Shown: one piece after another, positions 1,564-51,154 of the stretch
Layout of the letters: each line of letters starts with the position of its first letter
How positions within the stretch are numbered: the stretch's first letter is position 1
Assembly (NCBI GenBank): GCA_030704615.1
Contig: CM060731.1
Coordinates: forward strand, 44,702,001 to 44,766,000
Direction: 5' to 3'
Length of the DNA: 64,000 nt
Source: Takakia lepidozioides
Lineage: Eukaryota > Plantae > Bryophyta
Notes under the pieces: generated by a model
What the model saw: only the letters and a program-made list of their open reading frames with translations
Told to the model about the DNA's origin: nothing
Databases searched by the model: none
Position numbers and translations under genes: made by a program

Positions 1564-1956
1564 ATATATATATATATGACGCCAACCGAAGCTAGCGTAA
1601 ATAAGAGCCTCTTCCCCTTGCGGGTACTGCCCCCTTTCAGGGGTGGGCTCTATCCGAACTGTAACCTGTTTCACAGTGGCTAGCTGGCCACTTTCAATCT
1701 TACGTTTATTGAGGATTAGGGATGTGAGTGATGAAATAGTCGTGAAATGCAAGGCTCGTAGTAGAGGTGTAGTGTATTTGGGTGGTAGGTTAAGATTATC
1801 TTTTAAACCTTGGATATTATGGGTATGAGCACCGCCCCTGACACCTGCAGTGATGACGGTCAGAGGTGCCGTGTTCCAGCCTCTGTGACGGAGGGCATGT
1901 ATGATTGGGTCATATTTTTCATGTTTGTACATAATTGATTGACCTGGATTTCGATC
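1564..1956 (-). mobile_element. 3' end of a non-LTR retrotransposon: restriction-like endonuclease (RLE) C-terminus, 3' UTR and (AT)n tail; Dualen/RandI-like
   Basis: Translation 'DRNPGQSIMYKHEKYDPIIHALRHRGWNTAPLTVITAGVRGG...LILNKRKIE' fits the K..KY...L...GW....G.RG pattern of the RLE C-terminal half. It is followed by a structured GC-rich segment and (AT)n at 1564-1578, and is cut upstream by a CACTA terminus at 1957. Confidence 0.72.
1579..1653 (-). other. Structured 3'-terminal RNA element of the LINE (three-way junction plus UUCG hairpin)
   Basis: Minus strand reads ATAGAGCCCACCCCTGAAAGGGGGCAGTACCCGCAAGGGGAAGAGGCTCTTATTTACGCTAGCTTCGGTTGGCGTC. It is homologous to the inserts at 28018 and 29209, with compensatory stem changes. 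Confidence 0.75.
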
Positions 1957-7000: not shown

Positions 7001-10000
7001 CCTCTCAAACAATCACAAACAAATGCAAGCATACATACCCTAATACTCTTAAGCCTACGCTGAACCACAACCGCACCCTACCAGGACGTAATGGCTGCCA
7101 CGAATGCCGGCGGACATCTCCCGCCTAATGACACACCCTCCTCAAACCTAATCGTCACTCACTGCATGTTGTTTGCCTCTCTGTTTGTACAAGTCGCAGC
7201 TACTCACCCCCATTTGTGTTGTGAAGCTTATGATCGTTGTAGGAAGGTTAGAGGATAAGGCGAATCGCAAGTTTAGTGGGTGGGTAACCAAAGTCAGGAA
7301 CTAAACTCACCCATCTATTGACTGCTTGAACGTTGCTTCCACCTCCTTTATGGCAGCAATCCGGCGCTCTCGGAACTTCTCATACTCAGTGAGAGGGACT
7401 GTCACTTCGAAGACCTTCCGCTTCACCATGGACACTCAGAAACGATACTTATAGTATACTATAGATATAGAAATAGCACATTGGCAGCTGGTGCAAAATA
7501 AGAGACAATGCACTGTGCGTAGCATGCAAAGAAGGAAGGGGTGACGTTCAAAGCATGCACAGTGCAGGTGGCGACCGGATGCGTAGGCGTAGAATAGATG
7601 ACCGTCTATGGCGAATGGAAGAAGCTTATGCCACAAGGAATGGGCATACAAAAATGCTATGCAACTGCGATGAGTGTCATGGAGGAAAAATACTGTTGTT
7701 GGAAATAGTGAGGAATCATTACATGATACACGGGAGGGATCCTCTTCTCCAACGTTGTTCTCTTCCGGTACGATCGCCACTTTCTCTTCAGCACTTTAGT
7801 TTGAATTTTGAATGCAACGATCATCTTCTCCACATGTCGACATTTCGTTGGGTGATTGTAGTCAAGAAGTCATAAGATACAGACGTGACTATGACTACGC
7901 CACTTCCGTTATCACTTTAATTAATGCACATGTCGTGTTTTCATTGGTCATGTGTAGTCATGTAGTCATATATGACTAACTAAGTAACTGCAACTATGAC
8001 TTCAATGGCTACAAATGTCGTGTTTTGATTGGGTGTATATTCATAAGATATGTACGTAAATATGACTGCATCACTGCAACGTCACCGTGCCTCCTATGTC
8101 ATAATATGAACAAGTGTCACATCGTTGTTGGTCCACTCACAAGATGACTATTGGGATGCAATGATGTGAATATTCAGATGATGAAGACGAAGGCCCTGCG
8201 GCACAGCAGGAGCCCAATGTCACAGAGAACGCAGATGAGAGTGGTGGATTGGAGGTAGAAATCACTACAACAAATGAGCGTTTTTATGACTGCACATATG
8301 ACTATTTTTTCAGTCCTATATGCGTTCATGACTACATCACTCTGCAGTGAAAAAAGCCCTATCATAGCGACTAGTCTTTAGGACTGCATTTTGCAAGTCA
8401 TAGCCGTGACTGCGTGCGTGGCACCTGGAGTCATGATGTAGAGAGGATGTAGTCACAACTATATGATTTATATATGACTAACTATATGACTACATGTCTA
8501 CAAAGTATAACTCCATTGGAGAGGCGTCAGAGAGACATATGTAGCACTCCGGATGTGACACGTGTCCACGTGGACAACATATATGACCCACACGTGGGAA
8601 AGAATATCGTATCATATAATGTCACGTTGCCATGATGTAGTCATGAGTATATAACTTCATGACTAAAGAGGTTTTTTAATAATATTTTAATTTAATAAAT
8701 TAAATCATACAATTATAATATTTAGATTATTAATTGATTTAAATTCTCATTAGGTTTCTAGGAAAATAGAATGGAAGCCATTGTTGTCTTTTATTCTTAT
8801 TTTTATTTTTGTTAACAAAGAGGGACAGTGGGGGACAGTGGCCTCCAGAACTTTATAGGTAATGGACATAAAATGTCCTTGGATACAAAGAGGAAAAATA
8901 ACCTCTGGATAGAGTGCCATAGAGGCTGAAAGAGGAAGACACAACTTCGCGTACCAAGACAAGAAAGAGTAGTAAGAAGGAAGGCAAGCAAAGAAGGGGG
9001 TCTACATAGAGCTAAAGAGTCTAGCAGGAAAAGAGACTGCAGCCAGAAACTACTGCCATAACTTGGAAACAGAAAGGCACCGAGCTAAGGAGAAGAACTG
9101 AAAATCAGCTAACAATGTCATAAGAAAGCTGGGCCCTAGCCTTCCACTTCCTAAAAGATCTACAGATGGAGAGACATCCCTGCAGGGGTCGTGCTCTTCA
9201 GCTCAAGACCAACCAATTGATCATCTATCCATGCAGGTTTCTTGTAGCTATCCTTCCACAGGGAATCATAGGTAATCTGGAGATTGAAATCCGGCCCTCT
9301 TGGATGAATCTGGACCCATGCACTCTATCCCTGCTCCTTCAGCTATCCATGCCTTTGCACAAATCATGTATATATCATTGCCTTGCTCCTAGCAGCTGAC
9401 AATGACAGCCTAGAATTGTTCCAGCAAACACCCCAACCCTACTTACCATACTCGCTGACTTGTGTCTACTTCCAACAAGCATTCACTTTTTTGCCTCGAT
9501 TGTTCCACCATTGACTAGGGTCGGAAATGTATTCTTTGGAACAGAGCTTCTCCTCGTCTCTGTTATCTGTTTTTTCAATACTTTCCTGTCGACCACATTG
9601 GCAATAACATGTCAAAATCATTCCAAAACCACCAGAGATCCACCAACACGGAGCTAACTTGTAGAATTCAACATGAAAATATAGGGACGACTCTGATAGC
9701 AGGGGAAAACAGGGTGGAATATGTTGAAGAAAGTACCTTCATTAGTAGTGTCTTGTTCTATCAATTGTGCTGTTGCCGCTGTTTCTAGTAGACCATCTAC
9801 CCACTTGTAGCCGCTGTGCTATTGAAGAAGGTGTCTTCGTTACCAGTGCCTGATTTATCAATTGTGCCGCTGCTACGGCAAATTCCAGTTGACCATCTAC
9901 CCATGCAGGTTTCTTGTAGCTATCCTTCGACACATGGAATCATAGGTAATTTGGAGCTTGAAATCTGGCCCTCTTACATGAATCTGGACCCACACTCTAT

Positions 10001-10089
10001 CCGTGCTCCTTCACCTATCCATGCCTCTGCACAAATCATGCATAAATCCTTACCTTGCTGCTAGCAGCTGACAATGACAGCCTATATTT

Positions 10090-10550
10090 GTTCTAGGAAA
10101 CAACCAACTCAACTTATCACACGATCTCGTTCAGCCCTAGTGTTGAAGGCTCCCTCCACATCCTCAATGCTCCCACATTTGGCATACATGTCCACGAGGT
10201 ATTGTTCAGAATCACATATGGTACAATTCCAGCTTTGGTGATGCAACCATGAACCTCTTTGCCCTTTTCCAGGGCTGCCAGGCTTGCACACGCACTGCAA
10301 ACACGCACTAAAATGATGTGGTCGAGCTTCACCCCTTCCCCCATCATTGGCTCATAGGTATCCAAACCTCCATCCTGCACCCCTGCTGTGCATACCCTGC
10401 AAGCATCGCACTCCACGACACCACATCTCGTTTAGCCATAGTGTTGAACACTCCCTTGACATTGGCATATATGTCCAGAATTAGGGGATGTTCAGAATGA
10501 CATCTGGTTATAAAATTCCAGGGCTGCCAGCCTTCATACACTCCTATGAT
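10090..10550 (-). pseudogene. PLS-class PPR gene fragment
   Basis: 'LDIYANVKGVFNTMAKRDVVSWSAMLAGYAQQG', 'CSACASLAALEKGKEVHGCI', 'LVDMYAKCGSIEDVEGAF'; frameshifted. Confidence 0.9.
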
Positions 10551-10854
10551 CATGCTGACCCTACCAAGTCCCTTGTAAACGACCAAGAGGTCCATGCCCA
10601 ATGGAGACATCATCACATTTTAAGCTGGAATGGCTCCAAGAGTCATACTGAACAGTATTCTATTTTTCCCCTGCCTCCTTGCCCCCTGCCTTTCCCCATC
10701 CTGCAACTGAAAGAGGCTCTACAAACTTCAACCAGCTAGGCATAATTTCAGCATATTCAGATACCTAAGTCCCCTGTCTCAAGCATAAGAGCATCAAGCT
10801 GAAAGGCCTGCAAACTGAAAATCAGGTGCATATGCTCACATTATATTAAGTGGA

Positions 10855-10940
10855 TTGAAGGCATTAAATGCTTTTCTACACAACACCCTTGTCAACATGT
10901 ATGTTAAGTGTGGTAGCTCGTGGATGCACTTGTAGTTGTC
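10855..10940 (+). pseudogene. Short PPR fragment in the opposite orientation
   Basis: Plus strand reads 'LNAFLHNTLVNMYVKCGSS'. Confidence 0.65.
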
Positions 10941-11139
10941 CCACCCCGAGTTTAAATTTCAGTCTAGTGACGAGGGCAGGTAGGCCATTGAGATAGTCCT
11001 TAAGGTCCTTGCCCATGTCACATATTCGAAACAAGTTTAGGGAGGTTTAATGCCTAAATGTATTTCCACTGGACAGTGTGAGGGCATCAGAGGAGGAGAG
11101 AGAGAGAGAGAGAGAGTCACCGGGGAAGGTGGTCATCAT

Positions 11140-11570
11140 GGTACTCCAAGACACCACATCTTGTTCAGCCATGTTGTTGAACACTCCCTTTGCATCCTTG
11201 CTACACCTACATTTGTCATACATATTGTCCACCAGGGGAGTGTTCAAAATGACATCTAGTACATTTGCAGCTTTGACGATGCAACCATGGACCTTCTGCC
11301 CTTTTCCAGGGCTGCCAGGCCTACACACGCATTGCAAACACATACACACGTTATGTGGTCGGGCTTCAGTATCCCTTCCCTCATAATTTGCCCATAGGTC
11401 TCCAAAGCCTCCATCCCACGCCCCTGTTGTGCATACCCTGCAAACATCGCACTCCATGACACCACATCTCGTTCAGCCATAGTGTTGAACACTCCCTTTG
11501 CATCCTCGATGCACCCACATTTGACATATATGTCCACCAAGGCAGGGGCAGTGTTCAAAATGACATCTAG
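11140..11570 (-). pseudogene. PLS-class PPR gene fragment
   Basis: 'ALVDIYVKCGCIEDAKGVFNTMAERDVVSWSAMFAGYAQQGRGMEAL...KPDHITCVCVCNACVGLAALEKG'; paralogous to 10090-10550. Confidence 0.9.
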
Positions 11571-12579
11571 TAATTTGACAGGTATTCACATTTTTGCCTT
11601 GGTTGTCCCACCATTGACTGGGGTCAGAAAAGTATTCATTCCAAAGCTTCTCCTCATCTCTGTTACATCTTTTGGATACTTTCCTGTTGTCACATTGGCA
11701 ATATCATATCAAAGTCACTCCAAACTATCCCAGGTTCACTCAACCAACTAACTTGCAGAATTCAACATGGAAATTTAGGGCCGATTCTGATAAGAGGGAA
11801 AAACAGGGTGAAATGTGTTGAAAAACGTGCCTTCATTAGCAGACCATTTTCTCATTAGCAGATTTCTTGTAGCTATTGATCCACGGGGAATCAGAACTAA
11901 TCTTGTGTTTGAAATCCGGCCCTCTTGGATGAACCTGGACCTCTATCCCTGGTCCTTCAGCTACCCCTGTCTGTGTACAAATCATGAATACTTGTTGCTA
12001 GCAGCTGACACTGACGGCGTGAAGTTCTTCCAGCAAACCCCAACCCTAATTATTACATTAGTTCTAATTCTAAATTGCATCTACTTCTCTCTAGTGTAGT
12101 CCAACATGCATTCACCTTTTTGTCTCCATTGTCCCACCATTGACTGGGGTCGGAAAAGTGTTCATTCCAAAGCTTCTCCTCATCTCTATTACCTGTTTTT
12201 GGATACTTTCATGCTGCCAAACAGGGCAAAACAGGCTGAAAGAGGTCAAAGAAGAAGGTATCCTCACCACATTGTCCTTTACCTTGTGTCATGACCTATA
12301 GAGGATTTGACCGACCATCAGCCCAAAAGGACCCCTTGTGTGTGCTGCTTGTATCTGTAGTCAGGTAATGTTGGATTGGTATGTGAGATCGAACCACCAC
12401 GGTCGAGCTGAGCAGGCAGAGATTGAAACACGGCCTGCTAAGACCAAGCTGACTCTCCCAAGAACGGCGAGCGTCTCCTCGTCTCGTCTCTCTCCCAAAA
12501 ACGGCGAGCTCACAAGAATGTTGGGATCTTCTCCTCGTCTCCTCTCCTCCTCCTCTCCTCCTTCCTGCATCATTTGCTC

Positions 12580-12665
12580 AAGAGTAGGAAGGTCTGCAAA
12601 GCCTCCATCCCACGCCCCTCCATATCCTGCGATCACCGCGTTCCATGACACAACATCAAATAGAT
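12580..12665 (-). pseudogene. PPR fragment
   Basis: 'FDVVSWNAVIAGY' followed by sequence matching 11400-11425. Confidence 0.7.
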
Positions 12666-14674
12666 GGTGAAACGCAGGAGACAAAAAAGCCTAAGTCCCA
12701 GCCCGGTGTAAAGTTCGGCGGTGTAATCTTAAACCGTTAGATCTTAAATAATCTAGACCGTTAGATCTGTAAAATCTAACGATTCAAAAATAATTTCCAT
12801 CACATGATCTAACCTTGTACAACCACGTATTTAATCTCATATATCTTGCGATCCTTGTTAAGCCACGTCCATCCAGGTCCAATTTATTGAACAGATATCA
12901 AATCGACACACCGTATAGGCGGATGGATGAACCCATCCATTGAATGAATTCATTAATGTATATGCCTTTTAAATGACATGTGTAGTGATGTAGTCATATA
13001 TATAGAGTTATGAAACAATTTGCAGTAAGGGACTCATAAGTTTACATGCCATGTCATCGATGGATAAACTCATCCAATGGATGAATACATTTATGTATGT
13101 GCTTTCAAAATGACACGTGTAGGGATGTAGTCGTATAAATAGAGCTGTAAAACCATCTTCAGTCATGGAGTCACAAGATTCCATGAAACGTCGTCCACCT
13201 GTAGTCAAACATATCACACTAGTCATAAAACCATCTTTGTCATCATGGTCAACAATGTTTGACCAATGCTCCCTAATTTTCCGGAGTCATGTAGTGATAT
13301 CCATTACTATAAAGTGATAAAACTATGACTGCAACGCATTTCAGCGCTCTGTAGTCGTATACCTAGTGCCGTTTTTATGACTCCGCCAAATCCGTAGTCC
13401 TAAAAACGTTCATCTCTTGTAGTGAATCCAGCGTGCATTGCAGGAAGCGTTTCTCTTTGCAGATGCAAACAGAGAGGACCCCATTCATGGTGGAACCGAT
13501 AACACATTTGCCGATCATGACGATGACCTCAACGATTCCGGAGATAATGAATTTGATGAGAATGCTCACATGCACGTTGATCCCGAGTATGATAAACTCT
13601 TCCGACAGTCGCAATGTCCACTTTTTGAAGGGTGCTCGATCAGCCGGCTGCAAGCAACTTTGACGTTGCTGAACGCATGCACTACCCACAAGTGCACCAA
13701 TGCATTTGTGGATGAGCTTCTGGGATTGTTGCGTAAGAGTTTTTTGCCTAAAGAGAATTCATTGCCGAAAATTCACTATGAAGCAAAAACCATGATTGCC
13801 AAGATGGGATTGCAGTACACCATGATTCATGCCTGTGAGCGTGGTTGTGTACTCTTCCGTGGGGAGTATGAGAATGTAGACATTTGCCCAGTGTGCCGCA
13901 GTTCCCGTTACATTCCAGGTCATGGAAGTGTGCCCAAGAAAGTATTGCGACACTTCCCTCTCATTCCAAGGTTGAAACGTATGTACCGATGTAAATCGAT
14001 CGCTAACCTCATGACATGGCACGATAGACATAAGAGCCAGGATGGGTTGGTTCGACATCCAACTGATAGTAAAGCATGGAGACACATTGACACCACAATT
14101 GAGGATTTTGCTGCAGAGCCACAATCTCTGCGATTTGGATTGGCCTTAGACGGTGTAAATCCCTACGGAGCTCAATCCACAAGTTGGAACACATGGCCGT
14201 TCTCTTGGTCAATTACAATCTGCCTCCGTGGTTAATGACCAAAAAGTTCTTTGTCATGTTAGCGCTACTGATTCCTGGTAAGGAGTCTGTTACCTCGGAC
14301 AATGTAGATGTTTACCTGATGCCCCTAGTGGAAGAGCTACTGGAACTATGGAGAGGGATTGCAGCTCATGATGTTTCCCGTCCTCGTGGTCAACGCGAAT
14401 TCACACTGAGGGCAGTGTTGATGTGGTCAATCCATGACTACCCTGCATATGGCTTGCTCTCACGTCAAGTGACGAAAGGTTATGCTGGTTGTCCAGCTTG
14501 TGGACCCGGGGTGACTTCACAGAAGTTACACACATGTGGAAAAACTGTTTTCCTAGGCCACCGAAGATTTTTGGCCCACAATCATCCATATAGAGGGTCA
14601 AGAATGTTCAATGGCGCTATTGAGCATGGAACTCCTCCAAAAACGCAGACTGGAACACAAATCAAGGAGAGAGA

Positions 14675-16051
14675 TATGAGCCATGTATGTATGTCTGCAT
14701 CATTCTGGGGTATCGGGAAATCTGTGTTGCAAGCTACTATTGTGTTTAGGTCTATAATAGATGGGATATTTCTCCATTGGGGGTCTCGTGGGTCAGATGA
14801 GAGGATTGTAATAGCTTTGCGGATTTTGTGGTGGATATTTAATTGTGCTTGCCATTTTCTCTGTTGTGTTCTTGTCAAGTATCCTCCGTTTATTTTTTAT
14901 TGTTCAGTTTGTACTGGAGCAGGGAACTTTGTGCATGTATGTAGCGTGGCATCTGTAATTTGAGTGAATATTTGTTCTAGCTTGGAGCTTGCGTTCTCCC
15001 AAATTTGAAGGGTGGGGTTTGCTGAATATCGATCTAGTATTGTTTCAAAATCAGATATAACTGTACTAGAAATGGATCGAAACTTGGCTTGGAATGCCAG
15101 AATAGAGGAGGGGGGAATAGGAGTGGGAATACGTGGCCTTGTGTCTAACGAGGGGCCATTTAGGACTGGACCTATAGGTACTATATGCGTGGGGATCCGG
15201 AGAATAACTGGGTAATGGTCAGAGTTATATATGGGATCATACAGGATTGTACTGTACAGCTGTGTGGGATTATTTCTAGGCATTTTGAGGTAGTACCCAT
15301 CAATGAGGCTATGCGAGGTATAGTTTAGTCCTCCTTGCCTAGAGAAAGCCTGGTTTGTAGTGATGTATTGGAATCCATGCGTTTGGGTAAAAGTTGTCCA
15401 TTCTATGTCTTTTGGAGAGGGAGGGAAGTGTACACCATCATGTAATCTACCCAGCATAGATAGGTCTCTGTTGAAATCACCTGCGAGGAGGATTGTGGAC
15501 AAGGAGTGGAGTGGGTTGTTAGCAAAGCTCACAATTTGTTGTAGAATATTGGGGGTAAGGGCTATATCGTCCGGGTGTGAGAGCATATATAAATGAATGA
15601 TAAGTAGTTTTGGATAAGGGCTGATGTGAATCTCAACAATTTGGAGGTGAGTTTTAAGGTGCGTGGGGATGCGGGCATTTGTAGTTGTTTCTTGTGAGCG
15701 CATGGATATGTGTATACCAATGGCTAGGCCTCCACAAGTCGGCTGATATGGTGGTGAGCGTCGTCTATTATATTTTCCTGGCGATGGGGGGCTCCCATAA
15801 ATGATGTGGTGGTCAAACAGTATTATGTTGATATATGTGTTGGGCGAGTGCGAGTTGAGTTTGGTTTCTTGTAATAGAATAATATGGGGAGGGTTTGAGT
15901 TTTGAAGAATAAGTGAAAGGGTTGGCAAGCTGGAGGTAATGGATCCCACATTCCACGTAAGGCATATTAAGGGTTGGTCTATAAGGTTGTCTTGTGGGTT
16001 GTCTGGGGTATAAGAGAGTGGCGGTGGTGTAGGTTGGTGTACAGTGGGCAC
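14675..16051 (-). mobile_element. Non-LTR retrotransposon 5' part: APE (EEP) endonuclease ORF
   Basis: Motifs 'CLTWNV', 'ILLQETK', 'LLAGDFN', 'SLIDGYY', 'SDHYPV'. Continues after a frameshift at ~14890 ('TRTQQRKWQAQLNIHHKIRK') until the CACTA junction. No RT domain is present. Confidence 0.9.
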
Positions 16052-27415: not shown

Positions 27416-28017
27416 TAAAGTGGATCAAGTAAGGAAAGCTTACTGTCAAAAAGGTCTGACTTCCAACTTTCTAAGAGCTCATTATGTACTGAAGCTCTAA
27501 ACATCTCTGCAGGGAAGTCCAAGTTCTCCCTTGGATGGTCAAGCCTGCATAGAGTGGGGCCGCAACTAAGCGTGGTGGTCATCATAGATCGCTAAGCTTA
27601 ACTGGGCTCACCACTATGCAGGGTGGCTTCTAACCTACGTGCTAAATATTAAACATAGTAGTAGCATCTAAGAGTACCATCTAAGAGTTAATCCTACTTG
27701 ACCATGTTTGTGATCTCCATCTCCAACACCTCCCCTTGAACTTTAGAAGCTTGATAGCCCGCTGCAACTTCAAAGTGAGTATAATGTCAACGATGGTGTT
27801 CTCCAAAATAGATCTGCTCAGTGTTAAGAGAGTAGAATGTTTAGCCATCGGAGAAACATTATGCTGCGATTTGTGGACAAGTTTCCTCCTTTTAGACCCA
27901 GACAGCCACCAAGAAACAGACTCCCTCATAAATCAATTGTTCGCACCAAGTTGAGTTCATCTCGAAGCCTTTCGAAGAGGGTCCGACCCAATGGCTTAGT
28001 AAGAATGTCCGCCAGTT

Positions 28018-28123
28018 ATAGGGCCCACCCCTGAAAAGGGGCAGTAGCCGCAAGGCGAAGTGGCTCTCAGTTACACCGGCTTCGGCCGCGGAGTCTTCTC
28101 TCTCTCTCCGCCAGTCTTCTCTC
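28018..28123 (+). mobile_element. ~80-nt LINE-tail-derived insertion with (TC)n tail
   Basis: Flanked by TCCGCCAGTT (28008-28017 and 28124-28133). Removing it restores Copia RNase H 'DQLADILTKPL'. Homologous to 1579-1653. Confidence 0.85.
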
Positions 28124-29208
28124 TCCGCCAGTTGATCTCTAGATGGAACATGATTGATTTTCAACTCTCCTCCTGTGACTTTTTCCCTAATAAAATGGTG
28201 ACGGATACCTATGTGCTTCGTTCTGTCGTGAAAGACTGGATTTTCTGAAAGCTTGATTGCACTTTGATTGTCACACATCATCTGCGTGGGTTCTTTCTCA
28301 TCAAGGAATTGTAGTTGTGAAAGAAGCCTTCTTAACCACACCGCCTCCTTAGCACCACTAGTCATAACCATGTACTTAGCTTCTGTCGAAGACAGAGCCG
28401 TGCATGGCTGTTTCCTGCTTCCCCAAGAGATGGGACTTGAACCTAGTCTGAACAGATATCCTGTGGTGGACTTCCGATCGTTGAGGTCGCCGGCCCAGTC
28501 TGCATCTAAGTATCCAGTGAGGATGTTTGCCTCCCCTCGCTGGTAACAAATCCCCAAATCCATAGTACCTTTGATATATCTAAATAGATGTTTGATGGCA
28601 TCCATGTGTGGGGTTTGAGGTTGGTTGGAGAATCTGCTGACCATGTTCACAACGAAAGAGATGTCCGGCCGTGTTTGAGTAAGAAAATTTAACTTCCCAA
28701 CCATTCGTTGATAGAGTTGGGTGTCCACCGCTGGTGCTCCCATGTCGATCTCAAGTTTGAGCCTTGGGAGCATGGGCGTGACTACTGCATTGCATTGCCC
28801 ATATCCAAATTCTTCCAGCATTTTGGCCGCGTAGCCCCTTTGAGTCATAATGATTCCTTCAGGATGAAAGAAATACTCAAGCCCAAGAGAGTGCTTTATT
28901 AGACCCATGTCTGTCATCTCAAAGCGTTTCTTGATCTCTGATCGTATCCATTGCAACTTGTTGTCATGGTTACGAGTAAGATAAACATCATCTACATACA
29001 GCATGAGTAGGACAATTTTGTCTCCTTCTCTGAAGTAATATAAGTTTCCATCCGAGTTCGTGCGCTTCAATCCTTGTTCTTGAAGGTAATTGTCTATTTT
29101 GGTGTACCAGGCACGCGGTGCCTGACGAAGACCATACAAGGCCTTACGTAACTTGCAAACCTTGCTCTCTTTCCCCTTAGCCTCGAAGCCTTCAGGTTGC
29201 TGGATAAA

Positions 29209-29289
29209 GAGGACTCCGGCCGAAGCCGACGTAACTAAGAGCCACTTCGCCTTGCGGCTATTGCCCCCTTTCGGGGGTGGGCCCTATAA
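29209..29289 (-). mobile_element. 81-nt LINE-tail-derived insertion
   Basis: Flanked by the 12-bp duplication TTGCTGGATAAA (29197-29208 and 29290-29301). Removing it restores RT 'EEVFIQQPEGF'. Homologous to 28018-28095 and 1579-1653. Confidence 0.88.
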
Positions 29290-32200
29290 TTGCTGGATAA
29301 ACACTTCCTCTGTCAATTCACCGTTTAAGAAGGCAGTTTTGACATCTAAGTGAAATATAGGCCAACCATTCTGACCTGCTAGTGCTGTAACAACTCGCAG
29401 GGTGTTGTTCGAAGGATTGCATGACCCAAACTCACATACTCCTCATGAATCCTTGCCCTCTATGTCATCATCTATAGGTCAGTCAAGTGCAGACTTAGAG
29501 GGTAGTTCTGCCTCGACCTCCAATATGCACGGGCAACTAGAGGCAGTTCCACCAATACAGGAAGGTGTATATACACGCACTGGCCGAGCCATTCACCCTC
29601 CAAGACGATTCCATGATTTCGTGGTGGGTTTGTCTGAAGCTGTCCTAGAACCCACCACCTCTGCCGAAGCATCTCGACACCCAGGATGGGTCGACACCAT
29701 AGAAGAGGAAATGGCCTCAATTCACAAGAACGAGACCTGGACTCTTGAAGATCTGCCCCCCGGTAGACAACCCATTACCACCAAATGGATCTATAAAGTC
29801 AAAACACACGTTGATGGAACCACTGCCAAATTGAAGGCACGTTTGGTGGCTCGTGGTTTCCAACAACGAGCATGGGAGGATTTTGACGAGACCTACACAC
29901 CATCAGTACCTTCAGGTGGTTCTTGGACTGGTGAAGGCTCCAAAATATCAGGAGACTCTTGTTGTGGGAGCTCCCTCCGTGGTCCGTCCGGCTGGCTATC
30001 GGCTGGCCACGAGAAATGAATGTTGTGATCTTCAAGTGGTTGTGTCAACAGCAACTATGACACTCGCAAGTGGTTGTGTCAGCCGGACACTCGCAAGTGT
30101 TTGACATCAGGCAGGGCTCTAAATAATTTTTGGTGTGGTGTGATGCCATTGTTTGCCCTGGTAGGAGAAATATTGACAAGGTAATTTGTCGTGCTGACAG
30201 TCTCTACCCAAAGACGTGCTGGAAGATGGGCCCCGAAGGCCAAGCTCCTGGCTCGCTCTATCAAGGTTCGGTTCTTCCTCTCTGCGACCCCATTTTGATG
30301 CGGGGTATTAGATTGGGTGAATTGTCGTGTTATGCCATGATCTGCACAAAAATTTGAGAATGCAGTCAAGCAGTACTCCCCACCTTTGTTTGATCGCAAC
30401 ACTTTGATAGTGCGTCCAAACTGTTTCTCAACTCTGGACTTAAATTGCTTGAACAAGATGAAGGTGTCACTTTTTTTCCGAAGGAAGAAGACCCAACAGT
30501 ACCGACTCAAACGTCTCAAATTTTTTGTCAACATCATTGAAGACAGTAGCGATGAGGAGATCGATAATTTTCAGGAGTGCAATGATGCTCCCACTGACAA
30601 TCTGGCTGCAGATATCCTCGAGCTCAACGTAGCTCAGTACCGCGATGCATCTGATTGGTATGTGGATAGCGGGGCTACTAAGCATGTCTCGGGCAATGAC
30701 AGTCTTCTATCCAATATCAAAAAGGGAGAAGGAAAATCCAAGGTCAAAACTGCTGGAGGCTTGTACCACCAAGTAGCCGGGAAAGGCAATATTGTGATTC
30801 TTGTCAAGAATGATGCAATAAAAGAAGAAGTTTTGTATGTCCCGAGTGTATGCAAGAATTTGCTATCTGTTGGTACCTTGACTGACAAAGGATTTAGACT
30901 TCTCTTTGACGAAAAGAATGTTTACTTGCTGAATGTTGGCCTTGAGGTACTCGGTAAAGGAATTCGTGATCTATCGAATGGCCTTTACAAACTATCGGTG
31001 TTGAATGAATCATTCGTAGGCACAGTGGAAAGTAGCACGGACCTCACACGGATCTGGCATCACCAGTTGGGCCACTTGAATTATAGGAGTCTGAATTTCT
31101 TATCGCAGAAAGGTCTTGCCGTCAATCTTCCTCAAAATCTACCCATGAGCCATGATGTCTGTCATGCATGTGCGCTTGGAAAACAAAGTCGGGAGAAAGC
31201 TCCAAAGAAGAGTCTTCACATGAGTTCATCGCCTCTTGATATGATCCACACTGATCTCTGTGGACCATTGTCCACACCCTCTCTCTCTGGAGCTTTGTAT
31301 GTTCTTACATTTGATCTCATTTGATCTCATTTGACAATTCAGCGCAATCGCGCATCCAATGATCAGGTTTGCCGCAGAAGTTGCAGCTCCCCTCACGCTT
31401 GGCAGTGGCCCCCTTCCGATATTTATTGTCGGTGGGCTGGCTCTTGTTCCTTGCGAATTTAGACTTGATCAGCAAAGCCTCAGGGTCAGTTTTTTTTCCA
31501 CGAGCCTCCCAAATTTCTCGTTTGGCTTCGTCCAATAGAAGAATACCAATCAATTCATTGAGCGTTGGAAGTTCAGGTCGGTAGATCAAGGTGCATGCTA
31601 GTGATTCCAAGCTCTCAGGTAGAGAATTCAGAATCTGCTCCACCAGGTCCTCTTCACGGACAGGTTCCCCGATGTTGGCTAGCTGGTTGATAATCTCTTT
31701 GAGTTGCTTGATGAACTCTATCACCAATCCGCCATTCTCCAGTCGAATGTTGGTGAGGCGGCTCTTGAGCAATAGACGACGTGCTTCGCTTTTCTGCTCA
31801 TATAGGTCCTTCAAAGTCTGCCACATGAGCGCTGGATCTGTGATCCTTGCGATGTGTGGAATAATTTCATCTCACACAGAGAGACTGATTATCGCCAATG
31901 CTTTCTTCCGCCTACGTTCGTAGTCAGTGGCGGACTCTCCTTCCCTCTCTTGGAATTCTCCCTCGGCATTGGGCTCTAGGATGTCTATCAGTTCATCCCT
32001 TTGTAACAAGCTGGAAACACGGACCTTCCAGGTATTATAGTTGGAAAGTCCACCTAGCTTTGAGACCTCTGATACACTGCTTTCCCCGTGGGCCATGCTA
32101 ACACTCTCACAAATACTATGGAGTTACACTGTTGTTACTGTCACCTAGCAAAAGTGCTATCCGAAGTCCTAACGTTCAGCAAAGGGTCCCACTATTAGCT

Positions 32201-34025
32201 TGCTCTGATACCATAAAGTGGATCAAGTAAGGAAAGCTTACTGTCAAAAAGGTCTGACTTCCAACTTTCTAAGAGCTCACTATATACACTGGGCCGCATG
32301 TATTCAGGCTACTCATGAACTCCTTACGCTCCATCTACACGTTTTTTACCCGTCTGGCAAACCCAGAACAGTACGTGTGTGTGCACAAATTCTTTGAAAT
32401 GCAGCACATATTTCCAAGCGAATTCGTGATTTTGGAGTATCACTTGGAACGTGTCCGTCTGCACCGTCTCTTGCAAAGCGTTGTGTTGGTTGCATCGTTC
32501 ACGTCACCACATACTCTCCTTATCTTCTCTATGCTCATTTCTCAGTAGCCTCTTTGCAGCAATCTCTCTGTCAATTACATATTTCACACTCAGATCATTA
32601 ATTAAGTTATGATCGATAAATTTATTAAGGGAAGATTATGGCCGATAAAAAAGTTGTGGGCGCATCGTTGAAGCAAGCGAAGTGGGCAGACTTAGCCAAG
32701 AGTGTGGATGCGTGATGTAGAAATGAGAAGACTCTTAAAACCGAGGAGCAGTGCCGCATGAAAGTTGACAACTTGAAGAAAGGTTATCGATAGCTTTGAA
32801 ACTTTCTTGACGATTAGACTGTAAAGAATTTTTTCATAATGCCAGCTGGTTTGTTCTTTTGCAAGATGGCTTAGGCTAGGGACATACACAAGACAAGAAA
32901 TAAGGGTGTTGTCCCTTAGCTGTCATGAATGATAGCACTACAAGTGTTATTGGCTTTGTAAGAATGAAGGAGCTTAGCTCATGAGTACCGTGTTACTTTG
33001 CAGTATTAAGTTAAGTTGGTAACGTTCCCTACAAATGGCCTTGGTTTGAGGTCTGGGACGATCTGATAGGTGACACTCCTAAGCAATCACGGATTGGCTC
33101 TGGTCAGAAGCAACGCTACCTAACTTAGTACGTTCCCCTACCCAAGGGTGTATCGTGAAATTTCCATATTAGGGTAGTGGGGATCTCCTCTGTTCCCTAG
33201 TTGTTGCAATCTTCTTTGTCCTTTATCTTCTAAATCTACCCTAGAGGCCGCTCTATTTCGACGGACCCTGCCGGAATCATTAAATACATGCAGGTCGCCA
33301 GGTCCGGCAGGCTTAATGACAATATTAATTATTTCGTTCAAGCTTCATCCAATTTTTCAGGAATTTGGCACCCCGGGTATTTTTTCCATTAAAGTAGGTG
33401 AGCAATGTCAAGATTCACTTACAGTTGACATTCTCTCTGGCAAGTCATAATTATGGTTAGCCATAACTCTCAAGCCATAGTCATGGCTAGTGGTAAATAT
33501 TTTTAATAAATCTCAAACTTTGTTTTTATTATTATTTGGACAGAATTTTAAAATATTTGTTCTCTCTTAAAGTGAATTAATTAAAGACGAAATAGAGCGA
33601 CCTCTACGGTATTCTCTTAGTGCCGTTGGGCTTTACCAATTACCCCCTCCTAGTGATGGTTTCTGTTGTCAGGTCCAGTTTTTCACTTCATCTCTCAAAT
33701 GCATTTATGTGTCGATTGATCGTCTGGTCGGCTGACTGGTTGGTTCATCCAGCCAATGGGCATTGTTTTTTTGTGGTCATTCCTGACCAAGATTTGAATA
33801 GTTAGTGGTTTTCTCTTAGAAGTACCAGCTTATTTGAAAGTAAGACATTGGGTGGTAACTTCAATGTAAACTTCTCTAGTTAGTTACATGTGACCAACCA
33901 AATTATGTCCACCTAGAGTTCAATGGCTTCTGTATTGGGGTCTGTGCAGGGATCTCACCAAGTCTGCATCTTAAAGAAATTGGCAAGGGTGATGAATTTA
34001 CAGGGATGTGGTGGGGCAGGCAGTG

Positions 34026-37867: not shown

Positions 37868-40800
37868 TTACATACACCCCTCAAGACCTGTGAAAGGAAG
37901 TGGCTGCTCCTGCTTCTTGATATGCTCTAGCAACAGGGCAGCCTTTCTCATAGCCCGTGGAGTGCCATCACGGGCCAATTCACTCAGTGGCACATGAGCC
38001 CCCAACTGTCGTGCTATGGCTATGTGGGCAGAGTCATTGGAACTCAATGCAAGTAAAACTGCTGCAGCATTCTCCTTGTTGCGGGGGGCTCCACTTCTGA
38101 TTATCTCAACCAATGTGGGGATGGCTGAAGCCTGGCCAATTGCAACCTTGCCCTCCTGGTGGGTGGCCAGAATGGCAAGAATTGCCAGGGCTTCATCCAC
38201 CATTCCCGCATTTTGGTCTTCCAGAAGTTTCATTAGGGGAGGTACTACACCTGCCCGAACTGCACGCGCCTTGTTACCTTGGTAGATTGAGAGATTGAAG
38301 AGGGCTGTGGCAGCATCTTTCTTTCCCCTTGAGCTCCCATCTCGGAGCAAATCAACCAAAGCAGGGATTGCACCAGAAGCCCCGATGGTTACCTTATTCT
38401 CATCCACCACAGATAGACTGAAAAGAGTTGCTGCAGCATTCTCTCGGGCTTCCTTACTTCCATTCCTCAGGACTTCAACTATGGGGTAGATTGCTCCGGC
38501 TAAGACAATGGCTCCCTTGTTGTTATCATTTATGGAGAGATTCAAAAGCGCAGTCACTGCATGCTCCTGGGTTTTGGGGTCACTTGTGGTAAGAAGATCA
38601 ACCAGGCGAGGGATGGCACCTGCCTCTGCAATGCAGACCCGATGTTCAACATTCCTTTTGGCCAACAATCGGATTTCTCCAGCAGCAGCCCTTTGCATAT
38701 CTATCTGGCCACTCGAGAGTTTTCTGACTAGAATGTCGATGGTGACTCTAATGCCAGACCTCTTCGGAACTTCAATTCCATGTGTCTTGCACCACTGCTC
38801 AATCAAACTGCGGAGAACGTAGTTGGGGGTCAGCTTTGTATGGTGTAGCGTTACACCTGTCTTAGGACATGTACGGTGTCCAGTCTCCAGCCACTTCTGG
38901 ATGCAGGCACGCTCATAGGTCTGCCAACCAATGAAAGAGTGGATCAAAGTTCATTTCCAATGATGTAATGTGAAGTGGAATAATGCTGCCCCACTTCCAC
39001 AAAGGGTATAGCAATGTTTCCAGAACAATCAACTGCTGTACAGCAGAAACCTCTAATCATGTGCAGCAAGGATCATTTCGGCGTAGGGGCTGATGGTCCT
39101 CCAACTTTGTTAGCTCCTGAATCATCCTATTTTCCTGTTGTACCCTGATCAAAGTACAGGTAGATGAAAATAACCTAAACACAAGCGAAGAAAAGGTAAG
39201 GAACCAACCTGTCCAGTGGCAACGAAGACTGGATCTTTCATCATCTCCAACGAAATAGGACATTTGAAATCATCTGGTACATTCAGGCGCCCTTCTTTCT
39301 CAGTACCCGCACCTGTTCCCACTTCACTGGCATTCTGAGATCCTCTATTCTCAATACCGGCACCAGTCCTTGGTTCAGAAAAATCATTGAAGCCCCCTGT
39401 CTCAGCATACGACCGTACTGTAAATTGAGTCCTTTCTAGTTCAGGGAGATCTATTTCTAAGTTCTCAGCCGGCAAAATCCTCCTCAACTTCCTCAAGACA
39501 AAGAACATTTGTTCAAAGCCCTTGTCATTGTCCCGAATCACTCCTTCAGGAAAGATGGCTCCTTCATAGCTTTCATTTTCCATGATCTCCTGTATTGCGT
39601 GTGATTCTTCCCTTATTGCCCTGGTGGAATTGAGTTCAAGTCCATTGGCCAGTCTGCCAAGCACTGCTGGATCAGCAGGCTTATCATCTATCTCACCCAG
39701 TACTGAAATCAAGTCTGCATGTAATCGTACATCTTGGGGATCCACCCTGCCTTTTGCTCTCATAAGTTGAGTGTGCAGCAGCTCAATCTGCACCACATGG
39801 CAAAGAAGCATAGTGAAAAATACGTGAAGGCAGAGGAAAGCTACTTTCACAGTTCAAATTCAAAGTGGATGCAAAGAAAATTGAAACCAACAGGAAAGAC
39901 ACAACCTTGAAGGATTAACCGTACATGATTAACTTTCAATCTAACTGGGCAGCTTTGATTTGAATGGACACGAAATGGACTATTTAACAATTATCATCCC
40001 TCGCGTTGAAACAGTGTCTAGCACTCTCCAAGAGCAATGCTTAAGAGGCCTTAAACACAATGTGCACAGCTTTCTCATATACATAGAGACAGTTACCTGC
40101 TCTTGCACTTCATCTGAGACATCAAGAAGGTCAAAGGGCAATCCATCCAACCCCTTCCCCATCTCTGCTGTTAACTTCTGAAACCGATCTGTCACTGCAA
40201 GTCTCTCCATTATCTGCCACACGCACCACAATCAATTGCTCACAATCTTTGATCATACCAGCACAGTATCCCCTTATTCGTTGAAGCTTCTCATGGCTAG
40301 CCCAGAGTAGTTAGGGGGCTGTGCCCACTGACAGGATTCATCCCAGCCCTTGCTGACGCTTCTCACAGCTAACCTGAGTGGTTAGGGCACTGTCCCTACT
40401 GCTCAATTTGTGCCGAGGCAGAAGGTTTCAAATTGAAGACAACCCAATCAGAAGGGAGGTCACAACATAAACCTGGTGACCATCCTCACAGGAGGGAGAG
40501 ACAACTCAGACTCATGGCAGAACCAACTAAAACAACCAGCAATACAACAGTCCGAAATAAAAAAAGGTGCCCTACCTGGCATTGACTACTAGCCATAAGT
40601 TAAACAGAGACAAGCAGGAACGATCCCAATTAAAGGTACACCACATCCAATTAATTATATCTCCATGCAGGCCAACGCCTACCTGCCAGAAGTGACCTGG
40701 TTTTTCCAAAATCGAATGTGACCAGAAGTGCTCACATGCCATTGGTAAATTTGAGAAGACGTACCCTGACCTTCTTGAAGAGAGTAACTACTTTTATTAA

Positions 40801-47803: not shown

Positions 47804-48742
47804 TCATATTGATCGTGACCCATAGCTTGTACCCACTAAATGCTGCACACGCTTATGCAAATCCAGCAGCTTCTTTGCCTTCCTCCGGGCTTTGGCAGTG
47901 CCAGTGCTGGCGAGTTCTCCCAAAGGCCCATAAACCCCATATTTTTCCGATGCGTAGATGTGATTGGGATCATTCGAGCACAATTCAAGGAGAATCGCGG
48001 CTGCATTCTCCTTTTGACGAGGATTTCCATCTGTGATAATGTCCACAAAGATGGGAACAGCGGTTGAGCCATGGCCGATGGCAGTCTGCCCGTCGGTGTG
48101 AGTTGCCAAGATGGCGAGGACTACGAGGGCCTCCTCAGCAATCCCTTCATTCTCGTCAACCAGCAGCTTCATCAGAGGAGGGATCACACCTGCCCTTACA
48201 GCCAAAGCCTTGTTATCATGATATATTGATAGATCAAACAGAGCGCTCGCCGCATCTCGTTTCCCTCTCTTAGAACCATCAATCAAGAGCTGCACCAGTC
48301 CAGGTATGGCGCCCTCAGTGTTCCCAATGAGAGCCTTATTTGAGGAGCGCGTTGATAGACTGAAAAGAGCCGCTGCCGCATTTTCTCGGGCTTCCATGTC
48401 CCCAGTCCTGAGCACTTCAACGATCGGATCAACTGCCCCGGCGGAAACGATGGAATCCTTGAGGTGCGCATTGATAGACAAGTTCAAGAGGGTGGTAACT
48501 GCGTGTTTTCGGGTCTCGGCGTCATCGGTCTCTAACAGAACTGAAACGAGTGTGGGAATGGCACCTATCAGAGCAACGTAGTCGCGGTTCATGGAGCTTT
48601 TCCTTGTCAGCAGTCGAAGCCCCTGTGTAGCCTCCTTCTTCCCACCTACCTTGGATTCTATGAGATCTGTAACCCACGCATCAATTCTGGCTCTATCTTC
48701 TGGGGACACAGTGTGGGCCTCAGGAAAATCGCCCCCTGCCAT
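47804..48742 (-). CDS. Intronless ARM-repeat protein of the PUB family lacking the U-box (312 aa)
   Basis: Open ORF aligned with the ARM region of the neighbouring PUB ('HAVTTLLNLSI', '[15 protein letters not shown]', 'RGKRDAASALFDLSIY', 'PRQKENAAAILL'). There is an in-frame stop 6 codons upstream of the ATG. Confidence 0.88.
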   Translation of the reverse strand: MAGGDFPEAHTVSPEDRARIDAWVTDLIESKVGGKKEATQGLRLLTRKSSMNRDYVALIGAIPTLVSVLLETDDAETRKHAVTTLLNLSINAHLKDSIVSAGAVDPIVEVLRTGDMEARENAAAALFSLSTRSSNKALIGNTEGAIPGLVQLLIDGSKRGKRDAASALFDLSIYHDNKALAVRAGVIPPLMKLLVDENEGIAEEALVVLAILATHTDGQTAIGHGSTAVPIFVDIITDGNPRQKENAAAILLELCSNDPNHIYASEKYGVYGPLGELASTGTAKARRKAKKLLDLHKRVQHLVGTSYGSRSI

Positions 48743-50175: not shown

Positions 50176-50639
50176 TATGTCCAAATTTGGCTAAGTATAA
50201 AATGGATTAAGAAGACGTACACACATATAGAATTAAACCCAAAATCTCTTGCAATTACCTTACCAACAGATTACCCCGCCACTGATGTCATCCTCCTGGA
50301 TTCTTAAGTATTTAATAGTGAAACTGAGGTAAGAGGCTGTGGGAGGATTTGACAGGGGCCCCGCCGGAGGAGCCCAGGCTATGCATGAGTGCATTAATTC
50401 TTACATTATTCTTAGTGTCCTCCTACAAAATACAGTAGTCTTCAAGCCCTACAGTATTCCAAATAAATACATAATTTGTTTTAACTCTATAGTTGCTAAT
50501 TCAATTGGCCAATCAAATACAAATTGCTGCTAGTGAATCAACACTTCCCAAGAAAAAAAAGCTATTATAGCAGACCATACATATATGCCACATATTGTAT
50601 CTAATTATCTTTGTTAAGAGAAAAATGATACCTTGCAAA

Positions 50640-50760
50640 GGAAGCGTAAATTATGGTGTCTCTTGACTACTACATCTGGGAAGGGACACCTTTGTGCCAC
50701 CCATCTGTGGATTGAACCCACAACCGCTTCCGAGGTGGTGAGTGCCCACTGGGCTACAAC
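50640..50760 (-). mobile_element. Second tRNA-like SINE head
   Basis: Minus strand GTTGTAGCCCAGTGGGCAC...GTGGGTTCAATCCAC contains A and B boxes. No full cloverleaf; 3' end uncertain. Confidence 0.5.
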
Positions 50761-51154
50761 TTGGTTGTTTGTTATATTGTAGAGGGCTGAATTTCACCAC
50801 TCTTCCCTCGTCTCTCGCCAGCTCGTCACCCTCGTGTGTGGCGTGCCAATATTTTTATTCGTATTTGGAATTTTCGCACTCTCTTTTTTTCAGTAATAGA
50901 AACGGGACAGAGGCCCTTTTCGCGCACTCACTTTGTTACGTAGTTGGCAGATTGAAGCACGTTTTTTTCCCACATCCAACACATTATTCTCAATTTATTC
51001 AAAAAAGCCTGGAAACACCTGGCAGGAAGCTCACAAATCAGGCCCCCTTAAAATAACCTCTTTCGAAATAACCTCCCCATGAGCCGCCAAAGCACAAGGC
51101 TAATTGGGCACCTGCTAAATAGCCTTTTTTTTCCTTCAATGGATTCGGCTTTTC

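What the first reader, a model, noticed from the sequence alone, without database searches (positions are those of the whole stretch)
28008..29301. An ~80-nt structured RNA from a Dualen-like LINE tail moves as a stand-alone mini-retroposon
Seen: two insertions inside one Copia element (28018-28123 +, 29209-29289 -), each flanked by a different-length target duplication (10 bp TCCGCCAGTT, 12 bp TTGCTGGATAAA). Removing each restores the Copia reading frame. Both begin at the same point ((TT)ATAGGGCCCACCCC) and end at ...GGAGTC plus a pyrimidine tail. Both match the 3' terminus of the RLE-encoding LINE at 1579-1653. The 28018 copy has an extra partial target copy within its (TC)n tail, as expected from slippage during target-primed reverse transcription. 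No pol III A/B boxes are visible. Inference: a tail-only, promoterless retroposon family mobilised by a dual-endonuclease LINE. The shared 5' end suggests a defined RNA unit (processed or self-cleaved) or a programmed RT stop at the base of the structure, rather than random 5' truncation.
Basis: partly seen in the sequence, partly recalled or inferred. Interest (0 to 1): 0.9.

Follow-up and report, generated by a model that had tools for sequence, protein, structure and literature searches.

The report
Tail-only copies of a LINE's 3' RNA module
Two roughly 80-base insertions in a plant Copia element are retrocopies of only the folded 3' end of a LINE retrotransposon, probably extreme by-products of LINE copying rather than a self-sustaining new element.

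Summary
Two inserts (28018-28123 +, 29209-29289 -) interrupt conserved Copia pol motifs. Perfect 10- and 12-bp target duplications flank them. Both start at the same base (ATAGGG) and end in GGAGTC plus a pyrimidine repeat. They are 88-92% identical to the 76-nt 3' terminus (1578-1653, -) of a LINE fragment that encodes the end of a restriction-like endonuclease domain.

The module folds as a three-way junction (GAAA and GCAA tetraloops) plus a UUCG hairpin. Compensatory changes occur in all four helices. LINE 3' ends fetched from other samples carry the same or a related module after the stop codon.

Contigs of the source organism show a sharp module boundary at 1653/1654. About 90-110 contigs stop there, about 40 continue, and depth falls 28-fold. 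SINE heads or divergent LINE spacers could give the same signal.

In a related LINE family from a metagenome, 21 copies (11 with candidate target duplications) show a continuum of 5' ends. Two of them are tail-only and begin 2 nt apart.

No promoter, tRNA or ribozyme motif was found. Best reading: promoterless products of target-primed reverse transcription, with a 5'-end hot spot at the module edge. Stand-alone mobility is unproven.

Other first-stage notes report the same module and tail-only copies in other windows of this genome. I did not check them.

The parts
28008..28017 (+). Upstream target-site duplication of mini 1 (TCCGCCAGTT)
   Evidence: Read; identical to 28124-28133
28018..28095 (+). 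Mini 1 core, 78 nt, ATAGGG...GGAGTC
   Evidence: blastn; covariance model 95.6 bits
28096..28123 (+). Mini 1 pyrimidine tail holding a partial target copy (TCCGCCAGT at 28107-28115). Units 28095-28115 and 28116-28132 are a 21/17-nt imperfect tandem.
   Evidence: Read. TRF reports nothing at its threshold.
28124..28133 (+). Downstream target-site duplication of mini 1
29290..29301 (-). 5'-side target-site duplication of mini 2 (TTTATCCAGCAA on the - strand, codes FIQQ of the Copia RT)
29288..29289 (-). Two extra T between the duplication and the mini 2 core (not part of the target)
29212..29287 (-). Mini 2 core, 76 nt
   Evidence: covariance model 99.6 bits
29209..29211 (-). Mini 2 tail (CTC)
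29197..29208 (-). 3'-side target-site duplication of mini 2
1578..1653 (-). The same module at the 3' end of a LINE fragment
   Evidence: covariance model 100.2 bits
1564..1577 (-). (AT)7 tail of the LINE fragment
1654..1668 (-). 15-nt spacer between the family's usual TGA stop (1669-1671, lost in this copy) and the module
   Evidence: Majority letters at 1670 and 1671; frame
1684..1956 (-). Remnant coding the last ~90 residues of a restriction-like endonuclease domain
   Evidence: phmmer: 110 hits, best E 1e-19; tblastn 37-53% identity
27416..32287 (-). Host Copia element (gag, integrase, RT, RNase H; LTR remnants 27416-27489 and 32214-32287, 97% identical)
   Evidence: Pfam; repeats; blastn

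Best explanation
Each insert is a retrocopy made of only the 76-78-nt structured 3'-terminal module of an RLE-type (Dualen/RandI-like) LINE family, plus a short pyrimidine-rich repeat. The module is a three-way junction with GAAA and GCAA tetraloops, followed by a UUCG hairpin.

Proposed mechanism:
- The LINE protein recognises this module on an RNA.
- It nicks the target with a 10-12-bp stagger and primes on the (UC)n or (UA)n repeat.
- It copies the module, and cDNA synthesis ends 2 nt beyond helix P1.
- 0-2 untemplated bases are added and the junction is sealed.

I read the copies as promoterless, dead-on-arrival by-products. They would be made repeatedly from LINE or SINE transcripts that carry the module, with a hot spot of 5' ends at the module edge, and would not form a lineage that copies itself.

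Shown: the insertions, the target duplications, identity to the LINE terminus, the common 5' base, the covarying fold and the high copy number of the module.

Inferred: RT recognition of the module, target-primed reverse transcription, the template RNA, and the cause of the 5' stop.
For: - Perfect 10- and 12-bp duplications, and disruption of conserved Copia motifs.
- Simple-repeat tails of variable type, also seen in the organism's contigs as (AT)n and (GA)n loose ends at 1564-1578.
- Nine other LINE 3' ends have an RLE-type ORF, then a spacer of 0-41 nt, then an AUAGR-type or related start. Three match the model at 34-88 bits; the others match weakly, are cut off, or were aligned by eye.
- Covariation across 6 sequences: 91.6% of cells paired against 33-58% when partners are slid, 6 pairs with changes on both sides, and 0 of 500 shuffles reach the observed score.
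- Summed contig depth is 117,818 at 1639 against 4,177 at 1657. In run X1, loose ends number 70 at 1653 and 21 at 1654, while any place not listed has fewer than about 16. An independent study, X5, shows the same pattern.
- No tRNA, no Rfam family and no B box.
- In a related family, TSD-flanked copies of all lengths occur, including two tail-only ones, as expected for abortive reverse transcription.
Against: - Only two tail-only copies could be inspected base by base in this genome.
- The contig peak at 1653 would also arise from SINE heads fused at that point, or from LINE subfamilies whose spacers are too divergent to align. This effect is visible in the comparator set, where many pairwise alignments stop at the module edge.
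- The comparator's two tail-only copies start at different bases (-3 and -5), so an exact fixed end is not a general property of the clade.
- A structure-induced RT stop would be expected before a stable fold, not after it, so the cause of the hot spot is unexplained.
- No RNA data could be examined.
Confidence: 0.6

Rival explanations
1. A discrete tail RNA is the template. The module would be released from LINE transcripts by self-cleavage or a host nuclease just 5' of AUAG. The RT would then run off a true RNA 5' end, add a few bases, and either finish (giving a tail-only copy) or jump onto a pol III transcript (giving a new SINE).
For: - Both minis share the same first base.
- Mini 2 has two extra untemplated T at its 5' junction.
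- The unpaired AUAG or a close variant starts the module in several distant LINE relatives.
- The flanks next to the boundary are T-rich in the element's orientation.
- Unverified notes describe tRNA and 5S heads fused to the same tail.
Against: - No known ribozyme family matches, even at E up to 10.
- An HDV-like layout does not fit by eye: two unpaired bases precede P1 and there is no 3' P2 strand.
- The comparator's tail-only copies start at -3 and -5, not at one base.
- No RNA evidence was available.
Confidence: 0.2
2. A self-propagating mini-retroposon family. Inserted tail-only copies would be transcribed by read-through from host genes or other transposons, then recognised by the LINE RT and copied again, so that minis beget minis.
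For: - The two minis differ at about 8% of positions, including a compensatory U-A versus C-G pair in P2. They therefore descend from two different structure-preserving sources.
- Both share variants (A at 1610, G at 1615) that are in the minority, 12-18% of depth, among all module copies.
Against: - There is no promoter.
- Read-through templates should carry upstream flanks into new copies, giving variable 5' ends. That is the opposite of what is seen here.
- The same differences are expected if the sources are different LINE or SINE subfamilies.
Confidence: 0.1
3. Ordinary random 5' truncation with no hot spot. Under this reading, the shared first base of the two minis is a coincidence picked out from thousands of windows.
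For: - A related LINE family shows a near-continuous spread of 5' ends from -3 to beyond -880, with target duplications of 7-14 bp.
- The contig peak has other possible sources.
Against: - If 5' ends were spread over some 250 nt, as in the comparator, I estimate roughly 5e-5 as the chance that two of three copies in a window end at the same base at the module edge.
- About 70% of contig-resolved module copies stop at 1653/1654, against 2 of 21 in the comparator.
- Several other windows were independently noted to hold tail-only copies with one 5' end (unverified).
Confidence: 0.1

Closest known systems
Severely 5'-truncated ('dead-on-arrival') LINE copies, for example RTE 3'-end fragments with simple-repeat tails in Lepidoptera (PMC2887409)
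   Same: Both are TSD-flanked fragments holding only the 3' end of a LINE. Both have a simple-repeat tail, are made by interrupted target-primed reverse transcription, and are easily mistaken for SINEs.
   Different: Here there is no coding sequence at all, only the 76-78-nt UTR module. In this genome both inspected copies start at the same base, and the contigs show a sharp boundary there.
SINEs that share the 3' tail of a 'stringent' LINE, including Chlamydomonas SINEX-1/2/4_CR with RandI/Dualen tails and heads of unknown origin (PMC3747384, tables 1-3)
   Same: Mobilisation would be through a LINE-derived 3' tail that ends in short repeats rather than poly(A). The partner clade (RandI/Dualen-like) is the same.
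   Different: There is no head, no internal pol III promoter and no body. The element is the tail alone.
Short internally deleted elements (SIDEs) of R2 and CR1, for example Persaeus (PMC6740152)
   Same: Both are promoterless non-autonomous derivatives of a LINE that rely on its RNA recognition signals.
   Different: SIDEs keep both the 5' and the 3' end of the LINE and lose the middle. These copies keep only the 3' module.
HDV-like ribozymes that define the RNA 5' end of R2, RTE and L1Tc elements (from my own knowledge of Eickbush & Eickbush 2010 and Ruminski et al. 2011; not read here)
   Same: They provide a defined RNA 5' end through cleavage at the 5' edge of a compact fold of about 70-80 nt.
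   Different: Those ribozymes sit at the element's 5' end. Here no Rfam ribozyme model matches, and the fold lacks the HDV-type nested pseudoknot layout.

Membership tests
Classical SINE | Head derived from tRNA, 7SL or 5S RNA with an internal pol III promoter (A and B boxes) | tested here: not met
   ARAGORN finds nothing and Rfam finds nothing at E up to 10. The A-box-like motif occurs at chance level, and neither mini has a B box.
Classical SINE | 3' tail shared with a partner LINE, flanking target duplications, short length, many copies | tested here: met
5'-truncated LINE copy | Collinear with the LINE 3' terminus, with target duplications and the LINE's own tail repeat | tested here: met
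5'-truncated LINE copy | 5' ends spread without a preferred position | tested here: inconclusive
   Both minis share one 5' base, and contigs peak at 1653/1654, but that peak has other possible sources. A related family shows a continuum.
Dualen/RandI LINE clade (as the partner) | C-terminal restriction-like endonuclease (CCHC plus PD-(D/E)xK) | tested here: inconclusive
   Only the last ~90 residues survive in the window. They match the C-termini of proteins in which P0003 shows CCHC, RPD and E motifs.
Dualen/RandI LINE clade (as the partner) | N-terminal APE endonuclease in the same ORF as the RT, RNase H and RLE | tested here: inconclusive
   An APE ORF lies at 14897-16051, but no RT or RNase H is present in the window and nothing links that ORF to the 3' fragment. 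Relatives show RNase H followed by RLE.
Dualen/RandI LINE clade (as the partner) | RT sequence groups within the clade | not tested
   The window contains no RT of this LINE.
Ribozyme-processed retroelement (HDV-like, hammerhead, hatchet, twister and others) | Match to a self-cleaving ribozyme model at or next to the defined end | tested here: not met
   Rfam at gathering thresholds and at E up to 10 gives no ribozyme hit.
SIDE (short internally deleted element) | Retains both the 5' and 3' termini of the parent LINE | tested here: not met
   The target duplication abuts the module start within 0-2 nt, so no 5' LINE sequence is present.

The most novel reading that the evidence does not exclude
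The 76-78-nt three-way-junction module would be released as a discrete RNA by an unrecognised self-cleaving or host-processed site at AUAG, and would be the true minimal template of this LINE. Tail-only insertions would be its basic product. End-to-end template jumps from its 5' end onto pol III transcripts would repeatedly create new SINE families (the tRNA- and 5S-headed ones noted elsewhere in this genome). That would make it a natural modular SINE generator.
Probability: 0.2. Interest if true: 0.8.

Novelty: new variant of a known kind. Interest (0 to 1): 0.45.

Why it matters
If the 5' hot spot is real, this is a naturally occurring minimal retrotransposable unit. About 78 nt of RNA would then suffice for recognition, priming and integration by an RLE-type LINE in a land plant.

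That would give three things:
- a compact, covariation-supported target for studying how 'stringent' LINEs recognise their RNA;
- a natural test of the template-jump model of SINE birth;
- a possible small cis-module for retrotransposon-based insertion tools.

If it is only the short end of ordinary truncation, it is a routine feature of LINE biology. Its main value would then be for repeat annotation, because these copies would otherwise be misclassified as SINEs.

Tried and rejected
- **Rfam.** The whole window at gathering thresholds, and the LINE 3' end and mini 2 at E up to 10, gave nothing relevant.
- **ARAGORN.** No tRNA in the window.
- **Pattern scans.** The module core gave 0 matches in metagenome contigs and in prokaryotic genome contigs.
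- **Fishing further minis through ORFs that read across them.** No candidates were found. The RLE remnant also found nothing in the word-indexed protein search. Ten window ORFs are absent from the protein collection. More of this genome therefore could not be fetched.
- **TRF on the mini 1 tail.** Nothing reached the threshold.
- **A tRNA-like element at 50618-50765 (-).** It does not match the module model (2.5 bits), so I do not use it as evidence for head-to-module fusion.
- **RT collision with a terminating ribosome.** I considered this because the usual stop lies 15 nt before the module. I rejected it because the spacer ranges from 0 to 41 nt among relatives.
- **Counting the ~90-110 contigs that stop at 1653/1654 as tail-only copies.** I rejected this as over-reading after the comparator showed that divergent spacers make alignments stop at the module edge.
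- **'LINE 1564-16051 split by a CACTA'.** Not supported. Only 1684-1956 matches LINE proteins.
Full report
**Observation.**
- Mini 1 (+ strand) has a 78-nt core at 28018-28095, from ATAGGG to GGAGTC, and a 28-nt pyrimidine tail. The tail contains a partial copy of the target (TCCGCCAGT, 28107-28115). Perfect 10-bp duplications flank the element at 28008-28017 and 28124-28133.
- Mini 2 (- strand) has a 76-nt core at 29287-29212 and a 3-nt tail. Two extra T precede the core, and perfect 12-bp duplications lie at 29290-29301 and 29197-29208.
- blastn and a covariance model find exactly three copies of the unit in the 64-kb window. The third is at 1578-1653 (-) and is followed by (AT)7.
- The minis are about 92% identical to each other and 88-90% identical to the third copy.

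**Host element.** The host is a Copia element on the minus strand. It has gag, integrase and RT (Pfam) and LTR remnants at 27416-27489 and 32214-32287 that are 97% identical.

- Mini 2 sits between ...TAFLNGELTEEVFIQQ and FIQQPEGFEAKG... in one frame. The 93 inserted bases bring an in-frame TAG.
- Mini 1 sits between ...INHVPSRDQLA and ILTKPLGRTLFERLRDELNLVRTIDL*. The two frames differ by exactly the 116 inserted bases.
- Both are therefore simple insertions into conserved Copia pol motifs.

**Link to a LINE.** The ORF remnant just upstream of the third copy (1684-1956) finds 110 proteins by phmmer, with a best E-value of 1e-19.
- The longer hits carry RNase H followed by this C-terminal domain.
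- P0003 shows the CCHC, RPD and E motifs of a restriction-like endonuclease.
- tblastn shows that the window holds only the last ~90 residues. The window's 'LINE' is therefore a ~390-nt 3' fragment.
- The APE ORF at 14897-16051 cannot be assigned to this fragment. 'Dualen-like' is plausible but was not shown here.
- Nine of ten LINE 3' ends fetched from other samples (three Logan contigs of one run, four ENA contigs, one JGI contig, one other Logan contig) show the same order: RLE-type ORF, stop, a spacer of 0-41 nt, a start of the AUAGR-CCCACC type or a close variant, then T- or TC-rich repeats where the contig reaches that far. Only L002, L010 and L005 match the model clearly; the others match weakly, are cut off by the contig end, or were aligned by eye.
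- In L010 the stop codon is the TAG of AUAG itself.

**Structure.** The module folds as follows:
- P1, closing two hairpins: P2 with a GAAA loop and P3 with a GCAA loop;
- a linker;
- P4 with a UUCG loop.

On six sequences, 91.6% of cells form pairs, against 33-58% when the partners are slid. Six pairs change on both sides, and no shuffle of 500 reaches the observed covariation (four-sequence version). The alignment was fitted to the model, so these counts lean towards it. The minis begin two bases before P1.

**Genome-wide evidence and its limits.** Only Logan contigs were available. I laid three runs of one sample plus one independent 'plant metagenome' run on 1450-2150.
- Summed depth in X1 is about 430-740 in the unique flank and 112,000-130,000 in the module.
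- All-contig depth is 117,818 at position 1639 and 4,177 at position 1657, a 28-fold fall across the boundary.
- The best-supported loose ends in X1 are at 1653 (70 contigs) and 1654 (21). Position 1648 has 18 contigs in X2 and X3, which probably reflects clipping at the A/G variant.
- The 3' loose ends lie at 1564-1578 and carry (AT)n or (GA)n. Any place not listed has fewer than about 16 contigs in X1.
- Agreement among the upstream loose ends (0.39-0.40) is as low as among the 3' flanks.
- About 40 contigs continue into the LINE spacer.
- The independent run X5 shows the same pattern.

This establishes a sharp, highly amplified module. It does not count tail-only copies. SINE heads fused at that point, or LINE subfamilies with divergent spacers, would be clipped at the same place.

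**Comparator.** A second metagenome scan with the variant module of the ENA/JGI relatives returned 25 copies, all from one metagenome. For 21 of them the 5' end lies inside the contig.
- Homology to the other copies ends at -3/-4, -5, about -17 to -19 (two copies), -45, -68, -72, -131, -141, -146, -166, -238 ... and beyond -880, measured from the CCCACC anchor.
- An exact-repeat search finds candidate target duplications of 7-14 bp at eleven of these ends. I checked the junctions of the three shortest copies base by base.
- Two copies (L031, L025) are tail-only, and they start 2 nt apart.
- Tail-only copies therefore occur in this LINE clade as the short end of a continuum.
- The same set shows that many pairwise alignments stop at the module edge merely because spacers differ. 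This is the confounder.

**Excluded.** No tRNA, no Rfam family including ribozymes and no B box were found. The A-box-like motif is at chance level and is absent from LINE tails.

**Interpretation.** The anatomy is that of target-primed reverse transcription by the partner LINE: variable-length duplications, simple-repeat tails and identity to the LINE terminus.

I estimate that two of three copies in one window ending on the same base is unlikely under a comparator-like spread (roughly 5e-5). About 70% of contig-resolved module copies stop at that base. I therefore favour a real hot spot at the module edge (0.6), with the copies being promoterless by-products of LINE or SINE transcripts.

Three alternatives remain:
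- A discrete processed tail RNA (0.2) would explain the untemplated TT, the conserved unpaired AUAG and, if the other windows' notes hold, heads fused at the same point.
- Self-propagation (0.1) lacks a promoter and predicts variable 5' ends.
- Pure coincidence (0.1) is not excluded, because only two copies were inspected.

**Known relatives and novelty.**
- Truncated LINE 3' ends mistaken for SINEs are well known (PMC2887409).
- LINE-SINE tail sharing, including RandI/Dualen with SINEX elements of unknown head in Chlamydomonas, is also known (PMC3747384).
- SIDEs keep both LINE ends (PMC6740152).
- A class made of the recognition module alone, with a preferred single-base start, would be a new variant of a known kind.

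**Earlier notes and limits.** Other first-stage notes report the same module, tRNA- and 5S-headed SINEs, and tail-only copies with one 5' end in other windows of this genome. I could not check them. The organism is coded. No RNA data and no further genome sequence of the organism could be examined.

Noticed in passing
window 29402-30019 and 30386-31324: Two segments of the host Copia are inverted in place. The RT N-terminus, and the protease, pre-integrase and integrase N-terminus, are coded on the + strand, while gag, the integrase core, the rest of RT and RNase H are on the - strand (Pfam; tblastx against the second Copia). This could be a real rearrangement or an assembly artefact.
   Followed up: partly
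window 50618-50765 (-): A tRNA-like head with a perfect A box (TAGCCCAGTGG) and a B-box-like GGTTCAATCCA 38 nt later. It is followed by a ~75-nt region with a UUUACGC motif and a T5(CT)n end, so it is a SINE candidate. ARAGORN does not call it, and the module model scores only 2.5 bits.
   Followed up: partly
window 1957-2120: Very high-copy repeat directly upstream of the LINE fragment (summed depth up to 185,000), with a CACTA-like terminus CACTACAG at 2043-2036 (-). Because of this, the 5' end of the LINE fragment may be an interruption rather than a truncation.
   Followed up: no
window 13438-16051: CACTA transposase ORFs (Transposase_21, + strand) overlap the end of an APE-endonuclease ORF on the - strand (14897-16051). 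No RT or RNase H of a LINE was found anywhere in the window.
   Followed up: partly
window 1690-1737: Secondary depth hump, and several contigs whose match ends at about 1718-1738 (tables 2 and 8). This may be a second preferred 5' end or a short derivative about 75-85 nt upstream of the module. A few contigs also skip 47-68 nt inside or next to the module.
   Followed up: no
window 28008-28017, 29290-29301 and 1550-1563: The two duplications are alike at 7 of 10 positions when aligned from the element's 5' end (TCCGCCAGTT versus TCCAGCAATT). CCAG occurs within 9 nt of all three 3' junctions. This is a weak hint of a target preference, based on three sites.
   Followed up: no
L010:1147-1150; L011-L035: In one LINE relative the ORF's stop codon is the TAG of the module's AUAG start. 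In a single metagenome, 25 copies of an expanded (~115-nt) version of the module carry (CTTTT)n-type tails, and the candidate target duplications mostly begin with TA or TT.
   Followed up: partly
window 37868-39850 and 47804-48742: Two U-box/ARM-repeat (plant PUB-type) genes about 9 kb apart on the - strand.
   Followed up: no
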